DNA of 64,000 nt, from the NCBI RefSeq assembly GCF_963853765.1, contig NC_088855.1:29760001-29824000 (forward strand), read 5' to 3'. A model generated the notes under the pieces. The model worked only from the letters and a program-made list of their open reading frames with translations. It ran no database searches and was not told where the DNA came from. The stretch's first letter is position 1, and every line of letters starts with the position of its first letter. Position numbers and translations under genes: made by a program. Below, piece after piece: positions 3,342 through 39,460 of this stretch. Source of the stretch: Magallana gigas. Its lineage: Eukaryota.

Positions 3342-6300
3342 GCCAAATCTGCAAAATATGCGACATATAAATTAATATTATATTAATGTGAAACAAAAAA
3401 GGGTAGTCAGATCAATTCTTCGCCTCGGCAAAAGAGCTGAGATCATTAGTTTAGTATGAATCTCAATGTTTAGATATACAATTCTCAGTGAAATTGGGAA
3501 GAAGAACAAAAAAGGTGAAAAATTACCTTTGTCAGCAATTGGACAGAAAATCCTCTTCAATAATGATTTGCTAAGACCTTTGTTTTGTCCAACTAAAAAG
3601 TATAATTCAATTCACGTCCAATCCTACATTGTAAGTCATGAGAAAACTGCTCATTGACCCAAAACTACGACGAATATTCATACAGCATTTATGTCAATCA
3701 TGTATGTTAATTAAACAAAATTGGAGTCATTTTTTTTCAGAAAAGTGTAAGTCAAAACAAAATAAAAAACAACAGGGGAGATATTATTTTTATGATACAG
3801 GCATCGTTGTCTTTTCTCTGTAATGTTGATGAAAGGAATAGATGTGATGTCAGTTTGCAATTCTGTCTGGTATTTCGACTTTTTTTCTTGCCGTTCTCCA
3901 ATAAAAATTATGTAACGCTGCATTGGCTTCAAAAATGAACCGTATCTGGAATCCAGCTTTTAAAGCATCTCTGCTTCTTTACAAAATTGTATCTTTTTAT
4001 TGTGTTCTATTTCATGTTAATAGTAGGGGAAAAGATAGACATATTGAGTCCACTTCTTTACAATGTTTTATCTTAACGATATTTAAAAATAAAAACCAGG
4101 ACCGAGTAGCAAAATTATTAGGGTAGCTTTTGTAGAGATATTAATTCTTTTTTTTAAATTTTTTTTTCCCTAATTTAAAGGCCAACACTGATAAGCCTGA
4201 CCAGCCTTTTGTGGTACAATAGACAATGCAGCTAATATGTGGGTAATTGAGCTAACGTTTTTCACAGATTTCACAAAAAGACTTATATTAAATATGTTTT
4301 GTCGCAACGTTATGCATTTTTTTTTCTTTTAAGCTTAAAAGCAATATAATTAACTAATGAAGAAGTAACAAATTACATTTTTGAATACTTTGTCAAGACA
4401 TAATTATACTGACAACAATCTATGAACAACTTTATTACTGTAACAACATATACAACAACATTAATTAGCATTGTTTAAATTACAGGTACCTCGAAAATGT
4501 ATTCTGCAAAAATAAGGAGGATATGATAACTTCTTTTCAACTGTTGGGTAAGTATATATAATTCGACTATTTTTTGTTAATTTTCAACGTTCTTAGCTGC
4601 GTTTAACGAAAGCACTGACGACAAAGTCGTAAATATTTTCAGTTTCATTGAATGATATTTAACGAAAAAAGCGTAATAAAACCATACTTAAACAACCATT
4701 CTGATGTTTATAATTATATTTTACAGCCATGAGAATAAAACATTGATTAGTTTGTGATTAGTTAGCGTTCATTAATTTAGTCGTAAGTCGTTGCTCGTTC
4801 TTTTGCAAAACGCACAACTGATTGTTGGCATAATGCGCATAAAGTGCATATTCTCAAACAAGTTCACAAAAGTGCATTAAACAACTGATAAATCCCATAC
4901 TACTTTTCAGATACTGTATATCTAAAACTATATTTGTCCGAATGACCAAGATAGAAAGTTACATAAATAGACTCATACATGTTCTCCTTGTACTAGAGGT
5001 TTGATTGGTACTCAAAACTACACCATTTCATCAAGTGCAGGGGAACATTGTTTTTTGCAATCAGAAGAATAATTTTAAAAGTTTTAAGAATTATTTATTT
5101 TATTGACACCTGTTGTTCGGTTTGATTTTGATAGTAAAACTTATAATATGACGCAATATGGTACTGAAAATTTCAGTAAAGTGGCATTTATAAATCTTTA
5201 TAACTGTCTGTATTTGATTGCAAACACCCTCAGACTGGTCATTCTTCCCAACCTGTTCAAGACTGCTTTTGCATTAGATAATGCAAAACGCAATAATTGT
5301 TTTACTTTCTGTTTGATTTTTCAATATGGTTGGAAAAGTTTTTCTTAATATCATATATTTTACCATGTTTATAATAATTTCAAAGAAACGCCTGGCGATC
5401 CGTAATAATTCAAACTGATGTAAGTGAGCCTTGTTGATGGAAACTGTCAAAACAATATTTAATCATTGAAAAAAAAGTGTATTGATTTTACTTGCTTTTA
5501 TGGCATATGCTTTGGTTGATGTCGGTTTTCTTTTCAATCATAAAGTCGTTTGTCTCTGTAGAGTACGGTGAACAAAGATAAATTACACGCGACTTGCGCA
5601 TGCATTATACTAATTTTGATAAGTATTATCAGTGTTAGTCAAATAAAAAATTACAGACATTTACAGTGATAGTAGAAAAGTGCCATGACGCAATGTGTAC
5701 ACAAGCATTGAAAAATATTGTCATTTAGAGTGTAGTCAATATGTTTGTAATGTAAAGATATACAAAGAAGTATTTTAAAACGGCAAAAAGAACACAATGA
5801 ATCTTAATGAGATATTTTTATATCAATTTTTTCGACAAAGTGTGATTTTTAAAGATCGTTAATAATGAACATTTAAACAGAGAATTTTCGCTCGGGTTTA
5901 TCTTCTTTTTCATAATGAAGATGTGTCATGTTGAAATTTTGAATTAACCGGCTGGCATTAGATAAAAATTTACATGACAAAGTTGTCTTGTTGTAAATTC
6001 ATATTTACTAACACCCAGTAAGTTCAAAATTGTCAACAAAAAAGAAGGATTTCATCCTCAGATATAGTTTACATTCTTAAATTAGCCAGAATGGATAAAA
6101 GATTATCAGCCCCCCCCCTCCCCCCCCCGTTATAAATCCCCATAAGAGGTATGTTTTCGATTCGGTCATTTCCTCGAATTAAAAGAACTAGGGGACATGT
6201 CAATTAGGAATTCTTTGACGGATATGTGCATGAGAATTTTTTTTTAAATGATGGAAAATGAAATAAGGGACAACTTCTTTTATGTATAAATTTTCAAATA

Positions 6301-6413
6301 TTTTTATGATCATCAATTTAACACAAAGAAATAAAATTACCTCTTTGCATAATCTTTATTTAATTCTATATAACAGTTCTTTTTGATCACTCAGAAATCC
6401 CAACCGTCAATGA

Positions 6414-8966
6414 TTAACAATTGATATCAGATTTTAACTCAAGAAGTTTAAGAGGAATCAGATTTGAGGTTGTCACATAGGAGATGTCTTTTGTTAAACC
6501 CTGTAGGGTAGAGATGAAGAAAGCTGAGGTCACACCCTGTACAAACTGACGGTACTCTGTTAAATGGGTGTCGTTTGTTGTCTTGCAGAAGTGGGTTACA
6601 TGACACACTGCACAAAACATCAAACAAAAAAAAATTAGAAAATGTTAACAATAATTATCTTCTTGAGCGATATCATCTAAAGTATAGAATGTTTGAAATT
6701 ATACATATGAAAATTGTATACATACTTTCCCACCCCGCTGGATCCAGTATGTCACAGTGTCCAAAATCCTGACAAATCAAAGGCAGACTGTAGTGTTTTT
6801 AAATTTTGATTTCTTTATAATTTGTTTCTTTAATGCAACATAAATTAGGTACCATATTTATATCGAATAAGAATATCTAGATAATACTGCCAGAAAATTA
6901 TAAAATGCTTTCATTCAAAAAGGATGCAGAATATGTCTACTTATACAGTCATATTCTTACAGGAGGTAGAATTTCGGTAAAAGGCGGTTCTTGATACCAA
7001 TCAAAAATCTTCAGCGTTTTTGTCATTGACATGATTTTGAGAACAATGCTTCTGGAAAGATTTTCGATGTCCTTAAAGTGTCCTTTTCTTTTGCAATAGA
7101 AAAGCGGTCTCTAGAGAGTTTACTAGCTAATACATACCGCTACATTCATGACAATTCGAGGACAGGACCAAATATCGTACAACTTGTTGTAGTCAAAACC
7201 AGGAATGGCGCATTTCAATCCCTCCTCGGAGAGCTGTGTTCCGTACATTAAGGCAGGCATGTCATTTTTGATGGGAGAATCAACGTCAGCCGTGAAAGGT
7301 TCCAAAAATGCAGTAGACTGGAAATATAACGAATAATTATCAGTTTCAATTATTTTAAAATATGGCAAAACGTAGACATCATTTTACAGTTTTCACTGAT
7401 ATATATCTTCATGATTTACAAGTAAAAAGAAGCAAGTCCTCAGTTTGGAATAGTGACAGACATTGGTATATTTGGTCAAACGTTGCCAAATAAGAACAGA
7501 TATACGTTAAAATTTCATTGACGCGATGATTTTTTTTCCATCAGGGCATCACAAAATTAATTAAATCAAGTTAAGTACTTTGAATAGATTTCTCTTTTCT
7601 TTAATCATTTTCATGCTGACGTCACATCCTGACGAATGACAAAGCAGCCCTGTTGAGTTGAAGACAGGTGTTGATTCGGTTCTGTTTCTGAAATAGTTTT
7701 CCAACTGAAATAGAATATTTTGGCATTTATTTTGCAGAAGTTGATAGTTTCTCTATTCTGTTATTCTAATGGGTTCTGGTTTTATATTGTTACAATCTTA
7801 CCCAAGTCAGTTGTTTGAAAAATTTGTCAATGTCCTGCTTTCCATATTTTGGTGGTTTGGTGAATTGCATCCTCTCGTCGTAAACGGGAAACTGGTAGTC
7901 CACTCCAAACACGAAGAAACCATGTGAAGCAATGGAGGATAGGACAACCGTGTATAGCTCGGATAGGACGTACGTGTTTAGACCGCCCAGGAAAATCACA
8001 ACTGGATAGTCACCATTTTCCAATGGGAAAAACGCTGAAATGTGATTAAATAATCATTATAATTTGGTTTTTTCAAAATCATAACAGAAAACCATGTCTT
8101 TAATTGTTTGGTTTTTTTTTTTAATTATTTTATGGTTACAAATTTATTAAGTCATTTTTTTTTATTTTGTGTCTTAAATGAATTAACCTTTACTGAATGT
8201 TATATTAGGAAACGTATTCGAATTAATATGATTCGCTGGCATAGACACACATGCAAAGGAAAGGTGTATTTACTTTAAGACAACAAGTGATGATATCATT
8301 AAAAATCAACACGGAATAAATAGAAAAACATTTCTATGACAGTGTTGTTACCTATTGTATGTAGCGGACTCCCAACTATGGTTTCCGACAGTGTAATTTG
8401 ACCGACTTTTAGGAGACCTTGTTTGTACGGATTCCCTTTGTCTACGTAAATACCGCCCACAATAGCACATGCTTAAAAGACAAAACAAATTTAATATGTT
8501 ATCTTCACATTACTGGGGTACATGTAAAAAAAAATTATCACAAGCATTTCAAATGTTATTATACTTTAAACAATATGGAATATGAATGTGTTTATTGCAT
8601 GTAAAGGCCAAAACTTGACGGTCTTTTGGTTAAAATGGTGAACCAATTCTTGTTTTACAAGCCTTAGACATTAATTTTGAAGCTGGTTCGAAAGCCCGAC
8701 ATTAAAATATAGTCATGCAGTGATCATTTGAACACTAGTTTTTATCGTATGCATTTTAACATCAGAAGTAAACATTTTTGTATGAACACGTCGAAAAATA
8801 TAACTGTATGTGTATTGTATTTTGCATCTGTCATGTATGTGTTCAAAGATATCCCCTCTCCTCGATATTAAAAAAGTATGATGTTTTTATATTTGAAACC
8901 AAAACATAAATGGAATAATAATCCCAACTTACTTGCAAATAAGCTTAATATCACGTCACGTTTCAT
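6414..8966 (-). CDS. Secreted chlorophyllase-like alpha/beta hydrolase, 7 exons, 309 aa
   Basis: Exons 8966-8933, 8471-8352, 8034-7802, 7704-7579, 7317-7138, 6768-6726 and 6607-6414 total 930 nt, all GT-AG and phase-consistent. Signal-peptide-like start MKRDVILSLFATCAIVGG. Motifs YPVVIFLGG, IASHGF, CHSSG, FLEPF, LMYGTQL..CAIPG, DFGHCDILD and RQFVQGVTSAFF are collinear with plant chlorophyllase motifs (YPV, IASHGF, GHSRGG, DPV, YGHxDxLD) as I recall them. Confidence 0.85.
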
Positions 8967-9546
8967 CTTCTTCAGCTTATTAAATCGACATGTATGGTAT
9001 TTACGATAATATAAATACTTGTAAATGTAAATAAACAACAACCCAGACGGTCACGAGTGCTCGATTGATAACGTTGACCTGTATTAAATACCTGTATGTA
9101 TTAACTATTTATCGAGGATCTATTTAATTATGGGGTCAATTTGATAATCCATTTCCATTTATATTTAAGGTAAATGTATCAGTGAACCCCATGATGTGCA
9201 AAGACGAAAGATGTTGGTTCCTGTTATATGGACAAGAATCCAATTTGATCGTTTCAATTGTAATGAAATCATACAGTATCATATCACAAACCGAATATTT
9301 TTACACCTTGTTTTACCTAGAGGTTATCTGTATTTTGCCCAATCATGTATAGCTGCAGATCTGCACCTATATAGAAAGTCGTGTCTACAGACCGTGGCTC
9401 TCTCCGTTAAGATAAAATATTGTACCGCTCCGCAAAATGATCTGAATGACATACGCATTTACCATATTGACAGTATACAATGTACATGAAGCTACACATA
9501 CATGTAACACATTAAAAATATTCCCTTTTTAATCATTTTTTTATTT

Positions 9547-10593
9547 TTACAAATGTTCATAGTGTACAAGCTCTGTTGCGAACGCTTTGAAGCCGGCAAA
9601 GGTTTCCTCTCCGGCGGGGATGATGTAGGAGGTAGGGGCAACGAATCCGTGTAGGCCGGTGTCTCTTAGCTCCACAGTGTAAGAATACTTCACTCCGCAT
9701 GCGCCCTTGGCATAATCGTCAGCTCCTCCGGCTGCAGCATCTGGAAAATTTAATGACGTCATCATTTCAAAGCATCAATCCCATCTAGCATAGGTAGGAA
9801 TGCTATATAGTGATTAATTTTATTTTTTTAAAGACATTTGAATTATGTTTGAAATGCATACATGATCAGCAGACCCTTTTATTTATCAAGGAGATTTTTG
9901 TAGAAATAATTCTATACGAGTTATCTCGCTTGTTGGAGAGGCGTTATACCTTAAGGAGTGAAAAAAAAAAGATTGGATCCAACAGCAATTGATATGCGAT
10001 TGGTGTTTAATTACTCTAGGTATAGGACTTTAAACAACCCTAGATAACTCTTAACTATTCTATTAATATTTAGAAAGGTTACATACACAGGACCCGGGTG
10101 TCCTCCCCTACAGTAAATGTCCTCCCGTGTGTGTGACGAATTGCAGTTGCTGCAGATCGGCCCAGATGATCCTTTAAAGTAAAAAAAGCTTCACTTCAAA
10201 ATACAAGCTACTGTACACAAAAGACAATTGTTTTGTTATCATTAGAAACACGTTTCTTGATAAAATTTCGACGGATCAAAAAAATAAAAATTAGATGGTT
10301 CATTTTTTAAAATTTCGTTCATATGAGTTAATTTCAAAATGTTATCAATAATGGCCATCTCACCAAGTCCCTGTAATCGGCGGGTAAGATTGGGGTGTAG
10401 CCCCAGGGATAGATCCAGTATTGTCCGTATGTGTGCACGTTCAGGTAGGCGATCAGGTTGCTATGGCTGCACAGGAAGTTCTGAAGATGTTTGGTCTCTA
10501 TTTCTGACGTGGCGTGAGTTCCTGCGTGGACCTCTTCACATGGATTACGGCTTCCGCCATTGTCTGTGGAAAGTGAGTGAAAGCTGGATTTTC

Positions 10594-10656
<63 letters not shown>

Positions 10657-11982
10657 CTGTCCTATAGGCAGCTACATAATGTACTTGCATGCACTTATTT
10701 TTATGATAGTTCAGACAAAGAATTTTTGTTGCGAGAAATGAGCGCAAATCAATGCACCGTTTTGGTTGAAGTTGAAAATCTTGCTAAACTAGACAATTAA
10801 CATATTTATATAGCAATTTCTATCTAACGGGAAATAAATCTTTTAAGTACAGTTTGTAATGATATCATTTGCACCAAAAAGGCATAGAGAGTTGATTTTA
10901 CCAGGGTTCCAGTGATAAGCAAAGTTCCTGTTGAGGTCTACACCATGGCAGCCACTGATTACAGGCCGTCTGTTCTTTCTCCACATTCTGTCCTATAAAT
11001 ATATAAACCAAGGCCGTAACCTTCAGGGCATATGCTGAAGTATATACATTATCACATTTTCGGGCATTGTTTTAAAAGCTTTTATCAGATGCACTCTGAT
11101 TTTTTTTACAAATTCATCTTGAAGTTCATTTTCTCTTAAGTCTTAAAATAGATGACTTTAAAGAACCGTTGAGAGTCATAGCAAGAGTTTATGCGTGAAG
11201 AGAGGGTAAAAGCTTTTTTCTTCAATTAATGAAGGCACCAGTATTTGCGGTATATATCTTACGTGGCTTCGACTGTATTCGTAACCATCGGGGTTTACCA
11301 CAGGAGCAAAGTAGAAATCGAACTTTCCGAGGAGAGCGTCGATTGTTCTGTCTTGACTGGGATTGTTGGCAATCTGGAAAAGAGCATGTTAATAATCAGT
11401 GAGAGGAAACACCGTTTATGCAATGACCAAGTCCAAACACACAGAACCAAAACAAAATTGCAACAGGGCAAAAGCTTTTCTTAACACATACATTGTCAAT
11501 ATTAATTGTATATTTAATTTATTGCTGATTTAATTATTGTAGTGCAGGTGTAGAAAATGCAAAAAGCTACCTTCTACAAGACAAAACTGCATCCAAATTT
11601 GATTTTATGTACATATATTTGAGGAAATACTTTGGGCATAAAAAAGCAAGTAAATACTCTTAATAACTGGACTATTTTAAAACTAAAAGTGACCTATCGA
11701 TGCAAAAATAGAAGAAGCTTTGTTGACCTGATCAATAAAGTAGAGGACTGTGGTAACTGCCAGCCATTCCCTGGCGTGGATTCCCCCATCAGCGTAGATG
11801 GCCTTCTTGTTGGCGCCGAGGTTGTTGCTGATCTACAGTAAAAGGACTGTATCCATCGAAAGAAATCTTTTGGTAAATACGTTAATTGACTGTATCATTC
11901 GAATAAATCATTTGGTATATACATGTACGTTAATTAAGCATTGAATCATTATTTTTTGTAAAGATGTGGTCTCATAACTGCA

Positions 11983-12016
<34 letters not shown>

Positions 12017-13819
12017 GGCGCGATATGAAAATTTGTTTGCACACACCGTTGCAGTTATGAGACCACATCCTTCAAAAAATAATGATTCAATGCTTATATT
12101 TACGATTTTTAACATTTATTCTCTTCACAAAAACATGATTTATTTTCAAAAATCTCTGCCTTATTCGACGAGTAATGTGCAATTAACGGAAGAGCCATTG
12201 GAACAGCCGAATCATGCTGACAAAAATAGTGCACAGAGATTTGATAACTTATAAAAGAATTTTATTTTTCATTCTTTAATTTGATGATAGTAAGAAATTA
12301 ATCAATTGAATTCATTTTACTGTTAAAATATGTTTACATCAAGAAATATTTATCAGCGTAAGAATAATATCATGTCGTGATCTGGCTTGAAGTCGCGATG
12401 AGAGTCAGTCATGTTCTTCGAGAAATACTAAAGGAAGACTGTATTCATACGCACCAGATTTGGTGATTGGGTCTTCTGTGTTATGCGTAAAAATCACTCA
12501 AATAAATCAATGCAATTTGATAGGGGGAAAGAAAGAAAATATAAATATTTGACTATATCACTCGCATGAATCATTTGGTATAAACGTTCATTGACTGTAT
12601 CATTCGAATGAATCATTTGGTATATACGTTAATTGGGACTTTTGTATTCCGAAACAATTGATCTTGCTTCACCTTCCCGGCAAATTTTTAAATAAATCTC
12701 CTCCGGATGTTTCTTTAATCTGAGCAGGTCATTTAAAAAAATCTACTGTAATATTTCTATCAGGTATATTTCTGTCGTTTAACCTACAATTATACCTTTA
12801 CGTATTTGATAGCTCTGCCCTCGTAAGAATTTCCCATGGTGTGTACAGTCACGTGAGGATTGGCAGAAGCCAGCGAGTCGAGGTAGGCATTGATCTACAA
12901 AAGACAACAGACGGGCGAGTTTAGTTTTCGTCAGGTGTGTGTTTGCAAACAGTCCTAAAGTTGATATATAAATCAAAGAGCTGAAGGGATGGATACATAC
13001 GGAAGCGTGGTCGTTGAAAGCACCGATACTGAAAGTTGCTCGGCGATCGCGACCAGTGGAAATTTCGTCAATAAGTCTGTAAAAATAAAACCCGATTTGG
13101 TTTGTTTTGGTTTTGGTATGTTTGTTTTTTGTTTTGTTTTAGTTTTTTTTTTTTTTTTTTTTTTTTGGGGGGGGGGGGGGTTGTTGTTGTTGTTGTTGGT
13201 TTTTTTTTTGAGGAGGGGGGGGGGCGGGAGCAGAAGTGATAAATTTTAGTAGAAAGTCACAGCAAATATATATTTTAAAAGTATTATTTCTATGTGATAC
13301 ACATACATTTACTTATTTCACATATTTGAAAAAAGATAACACGATGACCCACTTTTGAACGTCCGTGATCCAGTGGTTGGCCTTGAGACCTAGAGCCTCG
13401 ATGTCATTGACAAAGTCTGTGATCTGTTCAGGGTCCACTCTGACGTCAAAAGTCTCATTGAGATAGCGAGGAGACTTCCAAATGTCAAGCTAATTACAGA
13501 ATGGTAAATTATTGAAAGTTTAATGACCTTCTTTAACATTACTAAACATTGGCCACATGGTCGAACTATATATTCACACGAGTACATATATCACAGGAAT
13601 CTTCTCTCAAGAACCGTATGGAAGGAGAGTGTATACAAAATGATTCCAGTGGACTAAATAAGTGACACGTTCATTAAGTCTTTTTATAGTTATACATGTA
13701 CATGTATATGTGTTATGAAACCTATAAGAAAGTCCAAGTGCATGTAGTTGACCTGGTTAATATAATACATGTGCGTTTCAAGAACTTCAAATACGAAGAA
13801 GAAAAAGGTATATAATTAT

Positions 13820-13889
<70 letters not shown>

Positions 13890-14383
13890 TATGAAATGCA
13901 CAGAGATAAAAATGAAATATCTCACGTGGTACTTTTTAGCCAAAGAGAGCAGCTCGTGCACATCTTCGATTGTTTTGGGCAAGATCTGGAGTACTTCGTG
14001 CCTGTAAATTAATAGGATAATGTAAACACGGCCATACATACATGTATGTACAGATAGGGCGTGAAGATTGTACCTATCTGTGATATGTTTTATAAAAAAA
14101 ATTATCGATGAATTTATCTGTATGTTTCATGGTTACAAAAACGGGAGAAAGTATCTATCAAAGTGAATCTTATAACGTTGAATTCCTTGTAAAGTTGACA
14201 TTTAAACCGTATTTATATTCATTGCTAAAAGTTTTTTTTTTAAAGGGTTCCTTATTCTTGTCAAACGTTTGAAATAAATGCTATACGTATGTGACAAGCA
14301 TACCCATCATATCTAATAGTTGGGTTCGGGACGGACCAAGCGGTCGTACTCAGCATTACCCCCAGGACGAGTTGTGTCCACAT
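9547..14383 (-). CDS. Carboxypeptidase B-like metallocarboxypeptidase zymogen (M14A), 11 coding exons, 417 aa
   Basis: Exons 14383-14304, 14001-13926, 13489-13353, 13076-13001, 12894-12796, 11832-11728, 11373-11263, 10992-10902, 10563-10364, 10171-10087 and 9740-9547 total 1254 nt in frame. Signal peptide [17 protein letters not shown] and a prodomain. Zinc ligands GIHAREW and NVHTYG; WRKNR, DLNRNF; YAAAGGADD (Asp255-equivalent); YSYTVELRD (Glu270). Confidence 0.95.
10599..10650. repeat. (TA)n microsatellite
   Basis: Perfect dinucleotide run. Confidence 0.98.
13824..13883. repeat. (TC)n microsatellite
   Basis: Perfect dinucleotide run. Confidence 0.98.
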
Positions 14384-15594: not shown

Positions 15595-18500
15595 ATGTCC
15601 GCCAAAGGAAAGAGTGGTCTTGACAAAAATAATAAATACGATCGACAGCTAAGGTTATATGCAGTTTTGTAAAACATCTCAACAAATAATTAGAAAATTA
15701 AATAAAAAATGATACCTCTTCGACCGGTTCATGAATTGTTATCGTATGATTTTATATTTTGGTAGATTGTGGGGTGACCATGGACAAACATCGCTGGAAC
15801 AAGCTCGAGTGTGTCTAATAAATGCTACAGCAACTGGGACTGAAATTCTGAAAAATCTCATTCTGCCAGGTGAAATGTCTGCTAGTTATCAAACAAGAAA
15901 TTTATTTTTTGTTATTTATTAATACCACATCTAATATTTAATAGCTAGCTCTTAGTGGAATAAAATCGGATTTCCCCAACTTCAAAAAGAGATAACTGTT
16001 ACTTTTAAATAGGATGTAAAAGTAAAAAAAAAATCAATAGTGATATAGCACGACAATTTCCTGACAAAAAAACTTATGGAGATCAGCAAATCGAGTATAT
16101 GACCAATAGTATATTATTAAAACCAATTTGGTTGGATTTTTCCGATCGATTCGAGTTCAACTCTATCAGCTATGTCATGCGTAAACAATACCCGCCCATT
16201 AACCACAAACTTTATGCACGGACAGAACAACAAATTATCAGGGAATGAACAATTCTTCGGGCTACTTGTGACTGTCAAAATTGGGGCATTTTTTGAAAGT
16301 GTACACTTGTGATAAAACATGCATATGGTACATATAGCTGTAGCTATTGGGTTAGCAAATATAAATCTACAGTGCATACCATACTTACGAAAAAATTGCA
16401 ATTTACGGGGCACAAAAATAACGCTATTTTTGAAAAGATTAACATCATATCATACCACATTTTATGCAAATAATCAATTTAAATAATTTGTCATTTAGTT
16501 AACTGGTGATAGTAATTGTCGCTTTACTTGCCCCAAACTTTCTCTAACTATACAACATTTAGGCTTACTCGAAAAGGGGATCAAGAGCTGTCATTTTTAT
16601 ATATAACAAACCAGTGGAACCACGCCAGTGTATGGAGCTGGTGATCGGTGGTTCAGAGACAAGCAAAATAAATAAATATTTACACCAAAGATGATAGGGT
16701 AACAGAAGGAGAAACCAATCGGACACTTGCCTAATGAAGGCTCACATGTACATACCCCCTTGCACTCTCCACTCCCGCCTCGTTCTTTCATATCATCATT
16801 CAATTTGTTTATTAATTGACTGTCGACTTTTGATCGAAAGTTGTATAAATCTAGGAATTCATATATATCTCGTCGGCTGGTGAGTTAGTAGGTAATACAT
16901 GTACATTATACATTTACGGTATATAGACTCAATTTATCGTGACGCTATCGTAAAAAGCCAACCAATGCGATTTTTATAATATCACCAATAGTCTTGCTGC
17001 TCTTAACGTAACAGGACATCAAATTTTTTTCTCTAGAGACTGTGGTAAGGCTAAGTTTAGGCTGGTCAAAAAGATTTTGTCCTTTTTTCTTATCACATTT
17101 TATGATTTAGAAAAGTTGTAGCATAGAGGTTCAAACTCATGCTGACAGGATGAAGGTCTGCATATGTATTAAATATTGGACACTCCAATGAGTCGCTTTT
17201 GTCTTTTTATATTATTTAGGTCTTTACGATAAGTATTGTTGGAGCAAATTTCATATTCAAAATTTGTAGTTCTGTGGTACCAGATGGAGTTGCTCTTTCA
17301 CCCACCTGTAAAAATGTAATTCTATGTGATTGATAACCAGGAAGTCTGAAAACATAACAAGCATGTTTCATCATTGGAACAGCCATATCCCAATGCAAGA
17401 TCAGGGGAAAATAAGCCATTACTGATTATATACCCGCAGTTACAAAAACCATTAACTTCTTTACTGTTTTACAAAAAAAATCATGATTTAACTTGATATA
17501 AGCATGAGTTGGTTGGAGTTACCAACATAATCTGATGGTGTGAATTGCTGGAAAATGTAATTTAGTGTTTTGATCTGGGCCATTATTCATATAGAAAAGA
17601 ACAGAAGATTTCAGATATACATGTATTAGATTTTAAGTTTTGAGAAGAGAATGTTTGTACACATTAAAAAAATGCAAAAAAAAAAGAGAGAGTGAGAAAT
17701 AGAATGTGAGAAGACAACACTACTTTTGTTAATTGACACTTGTTGTTTTCTGTTGTAAATTATAGCAAAAATATTGTGCAAGATGAAAAATATGGAGTCA
17801 TATTTAAAATAGAAAAACTTCTTTCATTATTATAACTTGTATTCCAGAGAGCAATTATATTTCTCTAGAAATGAGATCTCTCTTATCTCATTTAATTTTA
17901 AATTTACCTGTTTTAAAGTGCTCTTCCGTATTGGAACTTGGTGCAGGTAGCCACAAGTGTCACTGACAATAAAGTAATTGAATGGCTCTTATTTCTCCTT
18001 AATCCCAATGCATGTGCACTGTATAAAATTATATGGGTATGTTATGTGTATATAAGTATATATATGGATATGTTATACAAAATAAGATATATGTGTCTTG
18101 CTTAATACATGTGTTATTGAGGACTGTATCAAAAGTAGGAGACAAGACCAGGAAACTAAGAGGAAGAAATGTTATGTAGGTGGGATGTAGATCTGTGGTG
18201 GAGACTTCCTGTATCATGTGTAGTACTGTGCTGAGACCAAGGGACAAAATGAACTGTTTAAACACTTGTTTACTCTCTGACAGTTAGTGACTGGTAATCA
18301 AATTAAAAAAGTACTGTTCATGTACTTTGGAATATCTTTCTACTCATCGACAATCAGTGACTAAAAGATGTTTTCATGTCTTCAGTAACTTAAACTACAT
18401 GGTTACAGAGAACACATAACTTACAGCTATGTCAGTTTTAACCCCCCCCCCCCCCCCCCGAAATCTTGAATTGTAAACTTTGATAATAAATGGACATGAG

Positions 18501-21500
18501 AAACCAGGTATATGAAGAATCAAAATTATTTGTCCCCGTGTACAATTTATACTCTATTCCACAATGAGGGGAAATGGTGCATTTAACGTAGTGTAAAGTA
18601 TTTACCGGTACATGAAAATGATATTTATTTTCTCTCTTTCTCTTTTGTTTCAGGAGTTGGTTCATTTACTATTGTGGATGGAAATAAAATCAAAGGAGAA
18701 GATGTGGGAAACAAGTGAGTACTCTTACATAACATCTAAATGAAATTGTGACATGTATAACTGTCTTTTATATTTTATTTTATTTTCAGTGATGTTTTGA
18801 ATCAGTTTTCTTTTACCGTAATACCAGATTTTTATTCACATTTCTGAAACATTCTTTTATACATGTACATGTATGTGATAATGAATAGAATATACATGTA
18901 CTAGTTTTTGCAAGTGAAAAATAATTCAGAATTAAGTATGTTAAAAAATAGTTGGGTAAGGTATTTGATATTAGTTCTGTATCTTTTTCAGTTTCTTTTT
19001 ATCACAAGAGAATATTGGAGAGGTAAAAGAGATTTTTTTCTATTGTTGCCAATCATTCCATTTGTAAAAATAAAAATCAGTTGATGAAATTCGTGCATAA
19101 ATTTCTTTGTATTTATTCAATTTTATCTATGATCTTTCAGTCTAGAGCAAAGACTGCCATGGAGCTCCTGAATGAACTGAATGATGACGTCAATGGATGC
19201 TATGAAGATGAGGTTTGTATTTTTAAAAAAGTTTGTTGTATTGTTTTGGTAACATTAATATTATGAATCAGTTTTGATGACTCTTTACATTTTACATGCA
19301 GAATCCAGAGACTCTGCTCGAAAACAACCCAGAATTCTTCAAGAAATTTACAATTGTTGTAGCAACTGGACTATCTGAAAGGTAGGAATTCTTTTATAAT
19401 ATATTTCATATAAAGAGTATACATGTATTGATGAACTAAGTGAAAAAAGAAGTGCAGGATACTGTGGTTTCATCAATATTCGTTGGATACCAATTTTCTT
19501 GGATTTTGTTGTTTTGTTGATCCACGAAATTAAGTGTTCATTGAAGTGCAATTTTTATTAACATTTTGTATTGATAGGGTTATTGGCCACGAAACTGTGA
19601 TTTTCACTTTATCCATGAAAATTGGTGCCCTTGAATATTAATGAAACCACAGTATTGTTTTACTTTGTAAAAAAAAAAATTCTTTTTTTATGAAATAATA
19701 GTACTTAAAGTTGAGTGAAAAGAATTTTAAAAAATCTTTGTTTTGTTTAGGGTACTTTTACAGTTAGCTGATGTTTTGTGGCAACAATCCATTCCCCTAC
19801 TGGTTTGTCGATCCTATGGCTTCATTGGGTACATGAGACTGGTTGTTAAAGAACACACAGGTATTGCTGGATTATTACACCTAATTCATGTTCAAGATGA
19901 CAAAGTCAAGTGATTTAGACTTCTTTGCATTTGTGTACATGCAGAGATTAATCAAGTCAAATATGGAATCATACATAGGGTTAATTTGGCATCAGGAAGT
20001 TTTGGCTATAAATTTAATTCTTTTAAAAACCAAAATTCATTGAATTGTGAGCGCTTTATTCTTTTGCAGATATTCATAATTTAGCTATTACCGCAAAAAA
20101 AATTGGCAGATTTTAAAATTGATAGTTTGTATTGGCAATTATGTTTTGATTCATTAAAAGATAGGCTGAAGAAAGCTTCAATCATAATTTGCAAAAGATA
20201 TCCTGTGATATTAAGAATGATTATTTTAGGACACAATAATGTGATTAAAGGTTATAACGTAATGCAATGATAAATTTCCAGACATGATATGATTTCTCTA
20301 ATCATGTTTCGAATCTTATGGTTACAGTGATAGAATCTCACCCTGACAACGCCCATGAAGACCTGCGGTTGGACCGACCGTTCCCCGCCCTTGTTAAGTA
20401 CTGTGATAGTCTCAATATGGATACAATGAACAAAAAGGTCAGAGTTAACAAGGGGTTGATCGGTTTGAAATAAGAAATACAGTATAAGCAACAAATGGAA
20501 TGAAATTGAGCCCAATAAATACAGTATAAGCAACAAAAGAAATGAAATTGAGCCCAACAAAGGACTTTGAATTAATTTTTGAAATTTCATTCTGTTTACT
20601 GTGGTTTCATCAATATTTCTTGAATATGGTGATCCATGAAGTTAAATGTTCATCAAAATACACATATATAGTGATAAGATCGCTGTTCACAAATTTATTT
20701 ATCCTTGAAATATGTGTTTTTTATTAATTACACGAAAATTGATGTTCCCAAATACTGATGAAACCCAAACACAAAAGAATTTAATTCTTTGATTAAGATT
20801 TTTTTTTTGGTTATATCAGAATTGTTTAATGTAAGAAAGAAATGAATATGTATTCCTGATCCTTTTACATTAGTTTCATAAGATAAAGTAATTTTTTTCT
20901 GTTCTTTAGGATCATTCACACACGCCATGGCTAGTTATAATCTATAAATATCTCCAACAGTGGAAAAATGAGGTAAGACACAGCAGCACAAGAACATATA
21001 TTTGATTTACATTTATTAAGTCTGATTCAAGGGAGGTTATTTTGTCAGCCAGTCTTTGATGTTATGTACAAAACTTGTCAATTTCAGCATAATGGTTCAC
21101 CACCACAAAATTATAAAGAGAAAAATCAATTAAAACAGATGATAAGAGAAGGTAATGTATTACTCAATGTGTTTATAGAAAAGTATGTTATAAATTATGC
21201 AATATTACAAGCAGTATTACTGTGGAATCATTAGATTTCATGGTGGCTCAATTTTTGTGGAATTCTCGGGCACCGCTCACCCACGAATTAACATCCTCAA
21301 CGAATAAATAAATTAGGACTGTAAAGTCTTACTTCCTTTTGTAAGTATCCAAGAATACACGAAATTACGTCCCAACAAACTGTAAAATTTAAGCAATCCA
21401 CGAAAATTGGCCCCCACCAATTTTAATGATTTCACAGTATCTAGATATTTTACTGTGTCCAATGCTCTCTAATGACTTCCTCTTAAACCATGTAGTCATT

Positions 21501-28221: not shown

Positions 28222-31200
28222 TCACTGGTATTTGGACATGATATTTAAAATGTCTGTGTAAAGAAGTTGATGGGCGTCTTTTCCAATGATAAAGTCCACA
28301 TGATTCCAGTTTGGGAGCTCCTTCTGATGAACAATGTTAGGTAAATTGTCCAGTAGATACTGCACGTCAGTTCTGTCCGCCAAGAAATCGTTATCCCCAT
28401 AGAACATGGCCACTGGGACCGCCATGTTTTGTGGGTGATATTCTGGAGGCGTCGTCTACAAAAGCATATTCAATAAATCCTGTATATTTCCAATTAGATT
28501 TGATTTATGATCAAGATTTGGATGTTAGACACTTTGAAAACTTAGAACCATTTTAACAAGAGCTTGGACTTTGGGTAGTTGTGTCAAACAGCAATGTGAC
28601 GTAGGCCTTTCTACATCATTGTAGGCTACTCAGCCATGGCTCTTTGAAATCAACAAGATTTGTCTGGCTTTTGAGCCAAGACTACGCAATTGGTGTATAT
28701 TTCGCTTGAAACCAGCGTCATTTTCAACTTGTTTTGACACAAGAAATAGAAACCTGTAGCTACGTCCTACTGAAAGTCCAAGGCCTTGTTAAAATGGTTC
28801 TATGATGAATGTCATGTTCATTCTAAATTGGTATTAATGTGTTAAAAACTTCTTTAAAAATTTTCTTTAATTTTTCTTTAAAAAACTTGGGTTTTATTTT
28901 CAGTATTGTGGAATACTTTACATTTTAAACTTTAATAATTTGAATTCTTGTGTTTGTGTGAATATTATCACCTGGTTATAGCGTTTCATGTTACCATCAG
29001 GTCCATAGTCGTATTTCTGAAATTTATCAGCTTTGATACCCTGCGTTGGTAGAATAGAAAAAAAACCACACTGATGTTATGTTTACAACTTTCTATGACA
29101 ATGATTTATTCTTTGCAATCGCACAACAAATTTTTGGCCGATGTTACGTTAAAAAAAAAACCCCCAAAAACGGCCACTTGAACTCACTTGTAGGAAATGG
29201 ATGATGTCTTTGGCAGATGCCCCTTCATTTGAATGGGCCTTAAACACGGGGATTCTTGTCTATTAAAATAAGAATTTGTGTACACCTACTACAAAATTAC
29301 GATTTATGAATTACATTTACTTTCTAACGTCGCCTGTTGTTGTTGGTTCATGACAAACCGTCGGTATGTTACGATGTATTAAAAATGATTTCATTTACCA
29401 TTGTTATATGAAAATAAACTGGTAACGTTAATTTCGTCTTCAAACGAATTTAACAATGATAATACATCTACAACATAAAAAAAGAAGACTTGCCCAGTTG
29501 AGATTTGTTCTGTCCCAGCCCATGACAATGGAGGATAGTCCGTTACATATATACTGTGCAGGCAAAAAAGTACAGAATGTGTCAGCATACCATTTTGTCA
29601 GGGTGGAGTTTTGATCAAAGGCTTTCTTTCCTAGCACCAGTTCTGCTTCCTGTTAAAAATAGTTTGCATTCGATTCCTTCATGTTCTTGATATCTTGATA
29701 AAAAAAAAATTAGAGAAGGGAGGGGGTGTTTGTTTGTTGCGAGCGGCGAATTGCTATTAAACAAAAAAAAAAGGGGGGGGGGGTCACACATAGGGTACCC
29801 TGGATCTGAATGTTATGTCCTATATCCTTAATTAATTTCTCATTTCAATGTTTAAAGACCTACTTTCTGTGTAACGTACGGGTTGATGAATCCAAGGAGC
29901 CCTCTAACGTGCGTGACTTTGGCGATCGGGGCCATGGATATGAACAGTTTGATCTTGGAGGCTAGGTCTTTGTCCACGCTGAACTGGGCGTTAGCGATCA
30001 TCGTTCCCTGGGAGTGACCGATGTAGTAGACCGTTGTCGCGTTGGTTGTATTGAGGACGTAGTGGATAACGGCGGGAAGGTCGTATTCCGCCATTTCCTG
30101 CCAACTGGAACAAAATTGCGTCACCATAACCATATTGCGTCATCTGGCCACGTTACCTTCTGTAGTCTTTGGACTAAAAATTCTCGTTCAATTACGGAAT
30201 TGTGGTGTGTATACAGAGGTTAAATACACGATAAAACAGGGACTGTGCATGATAAGTCAATTCCAAATTCAAAACGCACTATTTCATATCTAACTCTGCA
30301 TAGATACCTCCAATCCCAAAACTCGTCTTGCGAGGGGTTGTACTTTTTGTGTGTCATTGAGTAGACGTTGCCCCTGCTGTTGGACAGCCAGACGTCATAT
30401 CCGGCGTCTGCCAGCACGAAGCCCAGACTTCCGGGAATCAGATTGATTAGGAAGTCGTCGGACGCCCCGGTCAGTCCGTGTTGGATCACCACCACACCCT
30501 TTGTTGCTTGAAGAACGACAATCAGTGCCATCAATGATAATGATCGATTTTGTTTCTTAAAAGAAAATAACGCCAAACCCGCAAGACAACAGACTCTGAT
30601 TAATCAGTATACACCGTATGCCGTTATAATAACTGGTTTGGGTATTATCTTTAATTTTTCATTTTAGAAAAATAACAATTACATATATAGGATTTGCGGT
30701 ATCAAAGATCTACGCCAGTTTCAGGATGATAGATAAGTTTGGAAGGCAAAACGGCGGTGGGTTTCATGCACGGATCTGTAAAATTCAAATTTCTTAATCT
30801 TTCATAGTAAAATTACAAAAGTATGCCTCGGACCCCCACCCACCCCCCCCCCCCCCCTCTTTTCCCCGGCAAACTCAAATATACCTCGGATCTCCCGTTA
30901 ATAAATTCTGGATCTGCGCATGGGTTGTTGTTTTTTTTTAGGGTTTTTAGGGGTGGTGGTGGTGAAATATAAAAGTTCTTTGAATATACCTTTTGTTGCA
31001 AACCGACCGTGCGGGATTCGCTGCATGTTCAGTATGAATCCATCCTTTGTTTCTACGTAGTGATTTTCCGCGGGGAATCCGTTATAAACTATAAGACTGG
31101 TCTGTCAAAGAGAAAAGCACAGTGAAGTATATAGCAAAGAAATATACATATATTATTTATTGCAACACTCTTAAACCCATTTTAAAATTGTTAATGTCCC

Positions 31201-36689: not shown

Positions 36690-39460
36690 TTGTTATATGA
36701 GAACATTCCAGGGGGATCCCCCTTTATATCAGCCTAGAGCGGGGTAACAAAATTCAGTATCCCGCGGACCGACTCCCATTTCTGGATCCGCTCATGAAAG
36801 AAATCGATCGGTACGGTATGTTCGCGTGAGGACAAAAATAACATTGGAATCCATAGCTTCACATATGCTTTACTGTTTGAATTAATATCAAAAAAAAACA
36901 ATGGCAGATTATTAGCCACCCCCCCCCTAAAATTGTCAAAATTAATTAAAATCATACTCCTTTTGGCAAAAAAAAAAATGAACAACTTGTGAAATTTAGT
37001 TATATATTTTGTGGAAACTCAAAGGATTTCTCTACATATAATCGATTTTAACGGTATTACATAGAATGAAGAAAACCCGTGCAGGGATTCATTGGTGTCG
37101 TAACTGTTACGTTTAACGTTATAAGTTAGGAAACCCAATTATAGTCACGCTCCCCGTCTGTTCAAATGTGACCAATCAAGCAACCACCTTGGATTATTTT
37201 AATCGGTTATACTAGTCTTCCTAATGTACATGTACTATAATACTGGCGCGTTTAATTTATTTTAAAATTTCATTTAGATCATCCCACTGAACTTATTTTT
37301 TTTAAACTAATTAATTTAGAGGCACTCCTCTAATAAAAGGGGTCTCTGCAAGACAGGAGAAGAACTATCACAAAAGTCTGACTCTGATGACTTCATTTTC
37401 ACCGTACAAAATCTCTATAAATTTATAAAAATCGACCAAATTTGCTGCATAAAATATCTTGGGGACATAGTATTACTGGGGATCCAGGGAGCTTCCGGGG
37501 GCTTCTTCCCAAATTTTGGCATCAAGGCGCATGCACATAGCATCATTTTAGAAAGTTGGGGGGGGGGGGGGGCCGGGGGGGGGGGCTCCATCAAAAAAGG
37601 AAAAAGGTTACTTTCCAAAATCCTGAAAATCCTAATCCGTGGGAGGGGGGGGGGGGGGGGGGGGGAAGTAGGAGTTGGTATAACTTTTAACGTCAAATTC
37701 ACTGTTTATTTCTTTATTTTCCATTCAATTTTTCAATGGGTCAAAGAAAAAGGGGGGGGGGGGGGGGGCAACTCCCATCAATTTTCAATTTTTTGTATGT
37801 AAGAAAAATCTTCGCTGCGCAAAAAAGTGTGTGTGTGGGGGGGGGGGGGGGGGGTCAGCCCCCTGATGTTACGTGCCTGAGGCAGCCCCAAGACCACTGC
37901 CTACATTTTGCGCGTGCCCCTCTAGATCCACCCCTAAAATTTGGCCTATTACATGCAACGCAAACGGCTACCGTGATGATAGTTCTTGATCAATGATGAC
38001 GTCACATATGACATCACAAACCCATACACGTATAAGCCTATTCACATTTTGACCGTTGGAAAAGATTGAGTCTGAGGGTAAGTTTACTTCCAGAATATTT
38101 CTTGCTTAATATGGTCTGAATTATATAAAAACCATTTTAAGATGTCCGCGCNNNNNNNNNNNNNNNNNNNNNNNNNNNNNNNNNNNNNNNNNNNNNNNNN
38201 NNNNNNNNNNNNNNNNNNNNNNNNNNNNNNNNNNNNNNNNNNNNNNNNNNNNNNNNNNNNNNNNNNNNNNNNNNNNNNNNNNNNNNNNNNNNNNNNNNNN
38301 NNNNNNNNNNNNNNNNNNNNNNNNNNNNNNNNNNNNNNNNNNNNNNNNNNNACGTATAAGCCTATTCACATTTTGACCGTTGGAAAAGATTGAGTCTGAG
38401 GGTAAGTTTACTTCCAGAATATTTCTTGCTTAATATGGTCTGAATTATATAAAACCATTTTAAGATGTCCGCGCGCTTTCAACATTTTGTAATGATATTG
38501 TAGATTGTTATAGATAGAAAATGAATGGACAGAAATACGGATTTTTTGCTGTTTCACACGTCCGTAGTCTAAAATGACAATATACAATGTACTTTAAATC
38601 GACCGAGGCCTCATAGACCTACAGTCCAACGACTGTCATTGAACGCTATATTGAGTTGTGTCCCTTTGCATTGCTTGGGTGCCCTGGTGGGTTTTTTTTG
38701 TGTTTTTTGTTGTTGTTTTTTTTGTTGTTTTTTTTTTTTTTACAGTTTGAACTGTAACTTATCTTACTTGTTTTTTTTAATGGCAACCCATACCTGAAGA
38801 AATTAAAATACAATATGCGCGGGTCTCTAGAAAAACGGGGAAAGAAGGATCCGTACTATAGGCGTTGGAACCGGGGGGGGGGGGGGGGGGGGGCAAGCCC
38901 CCCACTTTTTTGCAAAGTTAGACCTAACCATTAGGCACATGGGATCAGGGAGGGTCCAGCATCCCACTTTTTCTCGCAGCAAACATAATTGTTCCTAAAT
39001 TTACCTTTTAAAAAAGAAAACTTAAGTCATTGGTATACAAGCCCCCCCCCCCCCCCCCCTTAGGATTTTCATGTTTTGGGAAAAAAATTTGGCAGGTAAG
39101 AATTTTTTTGGAGTCATAGGGATACTTCCATCCCCCACAGCCCCCCCCCCCCCCCAACCACCACCACCACCACCGATTAGGATTTTCATGATATTGGTGG
39201 GAATTAGGTTTTTAAATTTTTTTTTTTTTTTTTTTTGCTTGTCAAGATTTTTTATGATCAGTCTAGCCCCCCCCCCCCGGTCCCCCATTTTCAATTTGCT
39301 TCCGACGCCACTGCGGATCGGACCCCCCCCCCCCTTAGAAAATTCAAGTTTCTTAGATTTACAGGGTAAAATTGCCGAAAATATGCCCCCTCTCCGGCAA
39401 TTTTAAATATCCCTCAGACCCCCACCCCCTTGGTAAAATTTTCTAGATCCGCACGTGCAA
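36690..39460. repeat. Cluster of short repeats rich in G/C homopolymer runs
   Basis: More than ten G or C runs of 9-20+ nt, with recurring GGATCCGC-like and AATTTT motifs. No spliceable coding signal. Confidence 0.6.
38152..38351. other. Assembly gap (200 N) with duplicated flanks
   Basis: 38028-38151 is repeated at 38352 to ~38473, differing only in homopolymer length. Confidence 0.98.

What the first reader, a model, noticed from the sequence alone, without database searches (positions are those of the whole stretch)
6414..8966. Complete, intron-containing, secreted chlorophyllase-like gene in an animal genome
Seen: a 7-exon, 309-aa ORF with a signal peptide and, in order, the motifs I recall from plant chlorophyllases (YPV..F..G, IASHGF, nucleophile elbow, CA.PG, GH.D.LD, C-terminal R.FV.G..AF). 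Six canonical introns and host-like neighbours argue against algal contamination. Established: chlorophyllase (EC 3.1.1.14) removes phytol from chlorophyll and is characterised in plants, algae and cyanobacteria. Inference: a phytoplankton feeder may secrete it into the gut to de-phytylate dietary chlorophyll (detoxification, phytol salvage, tissue greening). I know of no biochemical characterisation in an animal, but cannot exclude existing automated annotations.
Basis: partly seen in the sequence, partly recalled or inferred. Interest (0 to 1): 0.8.

Follow-up and report, generated by a model that had tools for sequence, protein, structure and literature searches.

The report
Oyster chlorophyllase-family esterase gene, already annotated
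This is a real, expressed Pacific-oyster gene for a probably secreted esterase of the plant chlorophyllase family; it is old in animals and already in public annotation, and nobody has tested whether it cuts dietary chlorophyll.

Summary
A minus-strand gene of 7 exons (8966-6414, six GT..AG introns) encodes 309 aa. The protein is identical to RefSeq XP_011453368.3 of Magallana (Crassostrea) gigas. All six splice joints appear in RNA assemblies of three runs, and one independent transcript contig covers the whole gene.

Chlorophyllase is the best match by every measure: Pfam PF07224 at 75.8 bits (cut-off 26); wheat chlorophyllase 8FJD best by profile (85 bits, against 48 or less for cutinases/PETases) and by fold (TM 0.78-0.81). 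PAF-acetylhydrolase stays below threshold.

It is not contamination and not a recent transfer. Introns 2-6 share position and phase in oyster, scallop, Lingula and amphioxus. A choanoflagellate has a homologue. Bacterial relatives are only 20-26% identical over their longer matches.

Differences from plant enzymes: a signal-peptide-like N-terminus, Glu177 in place of the catalytic Asp, a C-H-S-S-G-C elbow whose two Cys co-vary, and Cys at two substrate-pocket positions.

It is not new. The gene has been named "Chlorophyllase-2" since the 2012 genome (UniProt K1QVM5), and a 2025 Nature paper lists the family in aquatic animals. Chlorophyll de-phytylation in the gut is plausible but untested.

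The parts
8933..8966 (-). Exon 1 coding part (Met1 to the first base of codon 12). The transcribed exon reaches upstream at least to 9036.
   Evidence: Model. An in-frame stop at 9051-9053 upstream leaves this as the first ATG. Transcript L005 starts at 9036. The joint 8471|8933 is seen in 3 runs.
8352..8471 (-). Exon 2: end of the putative signal peptide (to about Gly18, 8452) and the start of the mature domain (conserved YVD.GNPY).
7802..8034 (-). Exon 3: strand with YPVVIFLGG (oxyanion-loop Leu70 at 7979-7981) and the IASHGF motif.
   Evidence: This exon alone scores 29.4 bits on PF07224. The joints 8034|8352 and 7704|7802 are seen.
7579..7704 (-). Exon 4: nucleophile elbow C-H-S-S-G-C. Ser153 codon is 7633-7635, Cys151 is 7639-7641, Cys156 is 7624-7626.
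7138..7317 (-). Exon 5: catalytic acid Glu177 (7300-7302), Cys207 (7210-7212), Cys223 (7162-7164), and the polymorphic Asp190 (7261-7263; 7262 T>C gives Gly).
6726..6768 (-). Exon 6, 43 nt: the GHCD motif with catalytic His235 (6757-6759) and Cys236. The exon has the same size and phase in scallop, Lingula and amphioxus.
6414..6607 (-). Exon 7 coding part with Cys247, Cys253, the RQFVQG helix, C-terminal Cys309 and the TAA stop (6414-6416). The 3'UTR continues to at least 6347.

Best explanation
The locus is the single Magallana gigas gene LOC105346495. It encodes a ~290-residue mature serine carboxyl-esterase that is probably secreted. The fold is the lid-less alpha/beta-hydrolase fold of plant chlorophyllase.

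Shown here:
- The gene is spliced and transcribed as modelled.
- Its closest family by profile and by fold is chlorophyllase.
- Ser153, Glu177 and His235 align with the wheat triad Ser145, Asp172 and His248.
- Cys207 and Cys253 align with the wheat active-site disulfide Cys220-Cys264.
- The gene structure predates the protostome-deuterostome split.

Inferred:
- The protein enters the secretory pathway.
- It forms four disulfides: 151-156 across the nucleophile elbow, 207-253, 236-247 and 223-309.
- It acts in the digestive tract or digestive gland.
- It hydrolyses a hydrophobic ester. The leading candidate is the phytyl ester of chlorophyll or pheophytin from ingested microalgae, which would give chlorophyllide or pheophorbide plus phytol.

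I put about 0.9 on 'active secreted esterase of the chlorophyllase family, ancient in animals'. I put about 0.45 on chlorophyll or pheophytin being the physiological substrate. The confidence given is for the whole statement with the substrate marked as leading candidate only.
For: - Gene model and identity to RefSeq.
- Splice joints in RNA.
- Pfam PF07224 scores 75.8 bits over profile positions 6-294 of 301, against 15.2 bits for PAF-AH, which is below its cut-off of 20.
- The family profile hits 8FJD at 85 bits (E 4e-23) against 47.8 bits or less for cutinases/PETases, with the triad and Cys columns aligned.
- The AlphaFold model has pLDDT 90.7. Its best PDB fold match is 8FJD at TM 0.78/0.81, against 0.58-0.66 for PETases.
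- In the ESM Atlas the nearest non-mollusc clusters are streptophyte chlorophyllases, TM 0.80.
- His152, Ser153, Gly234, His235 and four Cys are invariant in 34 homologues. Glu177 is nearly invariant. The Cys pairs co-vary.
- Introns 2-6 are identical in alignment column and phase in oyster, Pecten, Lingula and Branchiostoma.
- A choanoflagellate homologue exists.
- The tree within molluscs groups sequences by taxonomic family.
- Digestive context, all circumstantial: a co-oriented M14 procarboxypeptidase ends 581 bp upstream. Host 'chlorophyllase' is among the abundant Gammarus gut proteins and falls on a chlorophyll-free diet. The family is lost in terrestrial lineages.
Against: - No enzymatic, tissue or localisation data exist for this protein or for any animal member in the searchable literature.
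- Identity to wheat chlorophyllase is only about 21%.
- Wheat residues shown to shape substrate use (Phe71, Phe72, Leu249, Ile260, Arg146; PMC10011514) are Leu70, Tyr73, Cys236, Cys247 and Ser154 here.
- The acid is Glu, not Asp, and the first elbow Gly is Cys.
- NCBI now calls the product 'uncharacterized protein', and a Haliotis orthologue is named 'cutinase 1-like'.
- The signal peptide and the disulfides are inferred only.
Confidence: 0.6

Rival explanations
1. It is a secreted digestive esterase of the same family whose real substrates are other hydrophobic esters of the algal diet: wax or steryl esters, galactolipid or triacylglycerol acyl esters, carotenoid esters. Chlorophyll is no substrate or a minor one.
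For: The active site is lid-less and open in this fold (PMC10011514). Pocket residues differ from wheat. The next-nearest solved relatives are broad-specificity cutinases and polyesterases. The digestive neighbours (procarboxypeptidase, lipase exon) fit any digestive esterase.
Against: Chlorophyllase is clearly the nearest characterised family by sequence and by fold. The active-site disulfide typical of chlorophyllases is retained. The diet response in the Gammarus gut follows chlorophyll content, but that is only correlative.
Confidence: 0.3
2. It is a PAF-acetylhydrolase-like or immune/stress lipid hydrolase that acts on oxidised or signalling lipids, not on food.
For: There is weak local similarity to PAF-AH around the ASHGF strand. 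Snail 'Chlorophyllase-1' differs between schistosome-resistant and susceptible lines. Crustacean genes respond to cold stress.
Against: PF03403 scores 15.2 bits, below its cut-off of 20, and covers only about 40 residues. No PAF-AH is among the 60 best PDB profile hits or the 50 best fold hits.
Confidence: 0.06
3. It is algal or bacterial contamination, or a recent horizontal transfer from a photosynthetic organism into oysters.
For: The family is best known from plants. One paper proposes plant-to-crustacean transfer for the crustacean genes (PMC13163145).
Against: The gene lies in a 61-Mb chromosome record between animal genes. It has six spliceosomal introns, five of them shared in position and phase with a scallop, a brachiopod and a cephalochordate. 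Orthologues follow mollusc taxonomy. The choanoflagellate homologue carries the same Cys signature. The best bacterial matches over their longer segments are 20-26% identical. A very ancient transfer into an early holozoan is not excluded.
Confidence: 0.02

Closest known systems
Plant chlorophyllase (EC 3.1.1.14; Pfam PF07224; Triticum aestivum structure 8FJD, PMC10011514)
   Same: Same homologous family and the same lid-less alpha/beta-hydrolase fold (TM about 0.8). Nucleophile Ser preceded by His. Catalytic acid on the loop after strand 6. His in a G-H-x-D-x-L-D motif. The active-site disulfide positions are retained (Cys207/Cys253 = wheat Cys220/Cys264). The length is similar.
   Different: About 21% identity. 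N-terminal signal-peptide-like segment. Glu177 instead of Asp. Elbow C-H-S-S-G-C instead of G-H-S-R-G-G, with a co-varying Cys pair. Invariant Cys236/Cys247 sit where wheat has the pocket residues Leu249/Ile260. There is an extra Cys223-Cys309 pair. The wheat metal-site His76 aligns with Glu77 here. Activity on chlorophyll is untested.
Annotated metazoan 'chlorophyllase-like' genes (UniProt K1QVM5 'Chlorophyllase-2' and A0A8W8K438 of M. gigas; C. virginica, Pecten, Lingula and Branchiostoma entries; the homology group in PMC12804077)
   Same: This is that gene. XP_011453368.3 is identical, and the orthologues are 80-82% identical in other oysters and 39-62% in other bivalves, gastropods, Lingula and amphioxus.
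   Different: Nothing differs in the sequence. None of these was found stated in the papers searched.
Bacterial cutinases / PET hydrolases (Pfam PF12740; e.g. 5ZOA, LCC, IsPETase)
   Same: Same clan. The N-terminal half aligns (residues about 32-207). Both are lid-less and carry an active-site disulfide near the His loop.
   Different: Much weaker match (47.8 bits or less against 85; TM 0.58-0.66 against 0.78-0.81). No PF12740 hit for the oyster protein at E 0.1 or below. The C-terminal third does not align in most hits.
PAF-acetylhydrolase, plasma/type II (Pfam PF03403; 3D59)
   Same: Local similarity of the strand-loop 'YPV..F.HG...ASHGF'.
   Different: Below the Pfam threshold, about 40 residues only, and not among the best fold or profile hits.

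Membership tests
Chlorophyllase homologous family (Pfam PF07224) | Profile match above the curated gathering score over most of the domain | tested here: met
   75.8 bits against a cut-off of 26, profile positions 6-294 of 301. Exon 3 alone scores 29.4 bits.
Chlorophyllase homologous family (Pfam PF07224) | Lid-less alpha/beta-hydrolase fold closest to a solved chlorophyllase | tested here: met
   Model pLDDT 90.7. 8FJD ranks first with TM 0.78/0.81 and E 4e-18. Streptophyte chlorophyllase clusters reach TM 0.80 in the Atlas.
Chlorophyllase homologous family (Pfam PF07224) | Catalytic triad in the order nucleophile-acid-His at the positions of wheat Ser145/Asp172/His248 | tested here: met
   Ser153, Glu177 and His235 fall in the aligned columns. 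Ser and His are invariant and the acid is nearly invariant in 34 homologues. The carboxylate is Glu, not Asp; it is Asp in 2 of 34 and Gly in 1.
Chlorophyllase homologous family (Pfam PF07224) | Canonical G-H-S-x-G-G nucleophile elbow | tested here: inconclusive
   H-S-x-G is kept, but the flanking residues are Cys151 and Cys156 (C-H-S-S-G-C). The two Cys are both present in 29 of 34 homologues and both absent in 5 of 34, which suggests a disulfide. No coordinates were available to check the geometry.
Chlorophyllase homologous family (Pfam PF07224) | Active-site disulfide equivalent to wheat Cys220-Cys264 | tested here: met
   Cys207 and Cys253 align to those columns (numbering from PMC10011514) and are invariant. 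Bond formation itself is not shown.
Chlorophyllase as an enzyme class (EC 3.1.1.14) | Hydrolysis of the phytyl ester of chlorophyll or pheophytin | not testable with these tools
   This needs recombinant protein and an HPLC or LC-MS assay. No animal enzyme assay was found in ten literature searches.
Chlorophyllase as an enzyme class (EC 3.1.1.14) | Conservation of the wheat residues shown by mutagenesis to shape substrate binding (Phe71, Phe72, Arg146, Leu249, Ile260) | tested here: not met
   The aligned residues are Leu70, Tyr73, Ser154, Cys236 and Cys247 (residue list). This lowers the claim 'same substrate' but not family membership.
PAF-acetylhydrolase (Pfam PF03403) | Profile match above the gathering score | tested here: not met
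   15.2 bits against a cut-off of 20, residues 59-98 only.
PETase / cutinase-like (Pfam PF12740) | Profile match above the gathering score, or best structural match | tested here: not met
   No PF12740 hit for P0055 or P0003 at E 0.1 or below. PDB profile hits score 47.8 bits or less against 85. TM is 0.58-0.66. The Lingula homologue does pass PF12740 (32.2 bits), which shows how close the two families are.

The most novel reading that the evidence does not exclude
The holozoan clade of PF07224 proteins would be genuine secreted digestive chlorophyll/pheophytin de-phytylases. They would be inherited from before the choanoflagellate-animal split and lost on land. They would use a Ser-His-Glu triad and a disulfide-clamped nucleophile elbow. 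In that case a grazer enzyme, and not only algal chlorophyllase and gut acidity, would produce the chlorophyllides and pheophorbides found in guts and faecal pellets of aquatic herbivores.
Probability: 0.4. Interest if true: 0.6.

Novelty: already known. Interest (0 to 1): 0.3.

Why it matters
Pheophorbides and chlorophyllides are standard markers of grazing in aquatic ecology, and they are phototoxic to the animals that make or absorb them. If grazers carry their own secreted chlorophyllase, the origin of these pigments, the salvage of phytol and the way filter feeders handle a phototoxic diet become directly testable with one recombinant protein. As it stands, the gene is an ordinary annotated member of a family that comparative genomics has already noticed in aquatic animals.
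- Evidence that the gene is ancient in animals and not transferred recently.
- A list of active-site differences that argue for caution about the substrate.
- RNA confirmation of the gene model.

Tried and rejected
- The spliced protein could not be handed to tools by reference, so I scanned the exons singly first. That gave the C. virginica orthologue and, through it, the exact database copy P0080.
- Raw-read run X19 laid no reads, because only about 1% of the run was read. It gave no strand, depth or transcript-start information. Run metadata are coded, so tissue could not be read.
- Literature searches for tissue expression or enzymology found nothing. The term pairs were chlorophyllase with oyster, hepatopancreas, digestive gland or zooplankton, plus the gene and protein accessions. 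One search was badly framed and uninformative.
- Plant and algal chlorophyllase sequences were never returned by the word search and have no reference here. No tree with plants, algae and bacteria was built. The intron comparison was used instead. The third word search was left unused because it would not change the verdict.
- The bacterial genome scan gave only distant relatives.
- Model coordinates are not exposed, so Cys-Cys distances could not be measured. The disulfide pairs rest on co-variation and on alignment to 8FJD.
- No signal-peptide predictor was available.
- No paralogue exists elsewhere in the window.
- The N run 38152-38351 was left untouched.

Full report
**1. The observation**

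Reading the minus strand of 6300-9100 in three frames and anchoring the splice sites gives seven exons: 8966-8933, 8471-8352, 8034-7802, 7704-7579, 7317-7138, 6768-6726 and 6607-6414. Every intron starts GT and ends AG after a pyrimidine-rich tract. The intron phases are 1, 1, 0, 0, 0, 1. The CDS is 930 nt, giving 309 aa and a TAA stop.

An in-frame stop at 9051-9053 leaves the ATG at 8966 as the first possible start. The window holds no second copy of the gene.

**2. Is it a real, expressed gene?**

Yes, on three grounds.
- RNA-library contigs from three runs (X1, X2, X4) contain all six joints at exactly the modelled coordinates. The skipped ends read CT..AC on the plus strand, which is GT..AG on the gene's strand.
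- One run also holds a form that retains the last intron.
- A separate Logan transcript contig (L005) aligns as 9036-8933, then the five middle exons, then 6607-6347, and translates to the exact protein.

The raw-read run gave no reads and is no test.

**3. Identity**

A search with exon 3 alone found an 82%-identical full-length protein, which the word search named as Crassostrea virginica 'chlorophyllase-2, chloroplastic-like'. Its relatives include a 65-member cluster of Magallana gigas alleles.

One member, P0080, is identical to my model over all 309 residues. It is XP_011453368.3, named 'uncharacterized protein [Magallana gigas]'. Earlier names of the same entry and of its UniProt records are 'chlorophyllase-2, chloroplastic', 'Chlorophyllase-2' (K1QVM5) and 'Chlorophyllase' (A0A8W8K438).

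The window equals part of the 61-Mb record OY970747.1 of assembly GCA_963853765.1. That is now verified.

**4. Family**

- Pfam, full length: PF07224 Chlorophyllase scores 75.8 bits (cut-off 26) across profile positions 6-294 of 301. PAF-AH_p_II scores 15.2 bits, below its cut-off of 20. There is no PETase hit.
- Profile search: a profile of 34 homologues (A2) finds wheat chlorophyllase 8FJD first among solved structures (85 bits, E 4e-23, nearly full length). Cutinases and PET hydrolases follow at 47.8 bits or less and cover mainly the N-terminal two thirds. No PAF-AH is among the best 60.
- Fold search: an AlphaFold model built on that alignment has mean pLDDT 90.7 and pTM 0.89. Foldseek ranks 8FJD first (TM 0.78/0.81) ahead of PETases and cutinases (0.58-0.66).
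- ESM Atlas: after the protein's own mollusc cluster, the nearest clusters are streptophyte chlorophyllases. The feature score is 0.96 and TM is 0.80.

**5. Active site and differences from plant enzymes**

I used the residue numbering of the wheat structure paper (PMC10011514) and the profile alignment.

| Wheat residue | Role | Oyster residue |
|---|---|---|
| Ser145 | nucleophile | Ser153 |
| Asp172 | catalytic acid | Glu177 |
| His248 | catalytic His | His235 |
| Cys220-Cys264 | active-site disulfide | Cys207 and Cys253 |
| Phe71, Phe72, Arg146, Leu249, Ile260 | residues whose mutation changes Km or substrate preference | Leu70, Tyr73, Ser154, Cys236, Cys247 |

Across the 34 homologues:
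- His152, Ser153, Gly234, His235, Cys207, Cys236, Cys247 and Cys253 are invariant.
- Glu177 is present in 31 of 34. The others have Asp (2) or Gly (1).
- The elbow reads C-H-S-x-G-C. Cys151 and Cys156 are both present in 29 sequences and both absent in 5, never one alone.
- Cys223 and Cys309 are absent together in three sequences.

This pattern predicts four disulfides: 151-156, 207-253, 236-247 and 223-309. The prediction could not be checked geometrically, because model coordinates are not exposed.

The mature protein has 8 Cys and 3 N-glycosylation sequons. Every homologue begins with a hydrophobic N-terminal segment before the conserved YVD.GNPY. This fits secretion, but it is an inference.

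**6. Origin**

Named relatives occur in:
- oysters, mussels, scallops, clams and unionids;
- gastropods;
- the brachiopod Lingula;
- three Branchiostoma species;
- the choanoflagellate Codosiga hollandica.

I fetched the genomic loci of the Branchiostoma floridae, Lingula anatina and Pecten maximus genes and mapped each protein exactly onto its DNA.
- Exon sizes after exon 2 are 233/126/180/43 nt in oyster, 236/126/180/43 in Lingula and 239/126/180/43 in scallop.
- In amphioxus they are (90+158)/141/186/43, with one extra intron.
- On the protein alignment, introns 2-6 fall in the same columns with the same phases in all four species. Intron 1 lies in the variable signal region with the same phase.

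Such conservation is strong evidence that the gene structure existed in the last common ancestor of protostomes and deuterostomes.

A maximum-likelihood tree groups oysters, scallops, mussels, unionids and heterodont clams as separate starred clades. Its deep branches are unresolved and long-branched.

A scan of 185,579 bacterial and archaeal genomes found only distant relatives. They are 20-26% identical over their longer matches, or match just the ASHGF strand.

Contamination and recent transfer are excluded. A very early transfer into a holozoan ancestor cannot be excluded without plant and algal sequences, which the tools did not return.

**7. What is already known**

- The 2014 oyster SNP study lists 'Chlorophyllase-2' with a non-synonymous Asp-Gly SNP as a balancing-selection outlier (PMC4169597).
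- A 2025 Nature paper on terrestrialisation names the chlorophyllase family among the homology groups lost in terrestrial lineages (PMC12804077). Its supplement lists rotifer, amphioxus, crustacean and mollusc members.
- A crustacean study notes CLH genes and suggests transfer from plants (PMC13163145).
- A snail study lists 'Chlorophyllase-1' among differentially expressed genes.
- A Gammarus gut metaproteome finds host chlorophyllase among abundant intestinal proteins, lower on a chlorophyll-free diet.

I found no enzymatic characterisation of any animal member. The two chlorophyllase structure papers do not mention animals.

**8. Function**

What is shown is a conserved, transcribed gene for a protein with an intact serine-hydrolase triad in the chlorophyllase fold.

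What is inferred is secretion and a digestive role. The support is circumstantial:
- A co-oriented gene for a 417-aa M14 procarboxypeptidase ends 581 bp upstream. This kind of zymogen is typical of digestive proteases.
- An acid-lipase-like exon lies at 30.2 kb.
- The crustacean gut proteome and the loss on land, both cited above.

The substrate remains open. Chlorophyll or pheophytin is the best single candidate by homology, and I give it about 0.45. A broader or different ester specificity is a serious rival at about 0.3, because the active site is open and several pocket residues differ.

**9. Verdict**

The novelty class is already known. Interest is modest. The useful residue is a cheap, well-defined biochemical test of a hypothesis that matters for grazing-pigment ecology.

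Noticed in passing
window 9547-14383 (-): A co-oriented gene for a 417-aa Propep_M14 + Peptidase_M14 procarboxypeptidase lies directly upstream. Its last exon (9547-9765) ends 581 bp before the chlorophyllase ATG. This adjacency is not seen in the amphioxus, Lingula or scallop loci.
   Followed up: partly
window 8933-9200 and upstream to about 9555-9833 (-): RNA contigs that end at or splice from the exon-1 donor (8933) run on upstream, unspliced, into the 3' end of the carboxypeptidase gene. In run X1 their depth is about 735, against about 182 for the chlorophyllase CDS. Overlapping UTRs or read-through transcription would both fit, and contigs cannot tell them apart. Another transcript contig starts at 9036.
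   Followed up: partly
window 7262 (codon 7261-7263): Asp190 of the reference is Gly in all three RNA runs laid and in 10 of 12 listed alleles, as in other oyster genera. This may be the Asp-Gly 'Chlorophyllase-2' SNP reported as a balancing-selection outlier in 2014, but D184G and D258G also occur. The alleles differ at many residues, and there is a 3-aa indel in the low-confidence loop 103-112.
   Followed up: partly
window 6608-6725: Run X4 holds an RNA contig that retains the last intron while all other introns are spliced out.
   Followed up: no
window 30220-30573 (-): An open frame with weak Abhydro_lipase and Abhydrolase_1 matches, probably an exon of an acid-lipase-like gene.
   Followed up: no
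window 15595-18966 (+): The annotated 550-aa ThiF-family (E1-like) gene overlaps this range, according to the gene calls on the public record.
   Followed up: no
L001 6633-7458 (Branchiostoma floridae): The amphioxus orthologue has one extra phase-1 intron, at the position of oyster residue 81, splitting the exon that is single in the three lophotrochozoans. Branchiostoma has at least two divergent paralogue groups.
   Followed up: partly
protein P0101 (Pinctada imbricata, 556 aa) and P0008 (Tegillarca granosa, 344 aa): These gene models look like tandem or fused duplicates of the domain. P0008 matches the query twice. They may be annotation fusions of neighbouring paralogues.
   Followed up: no
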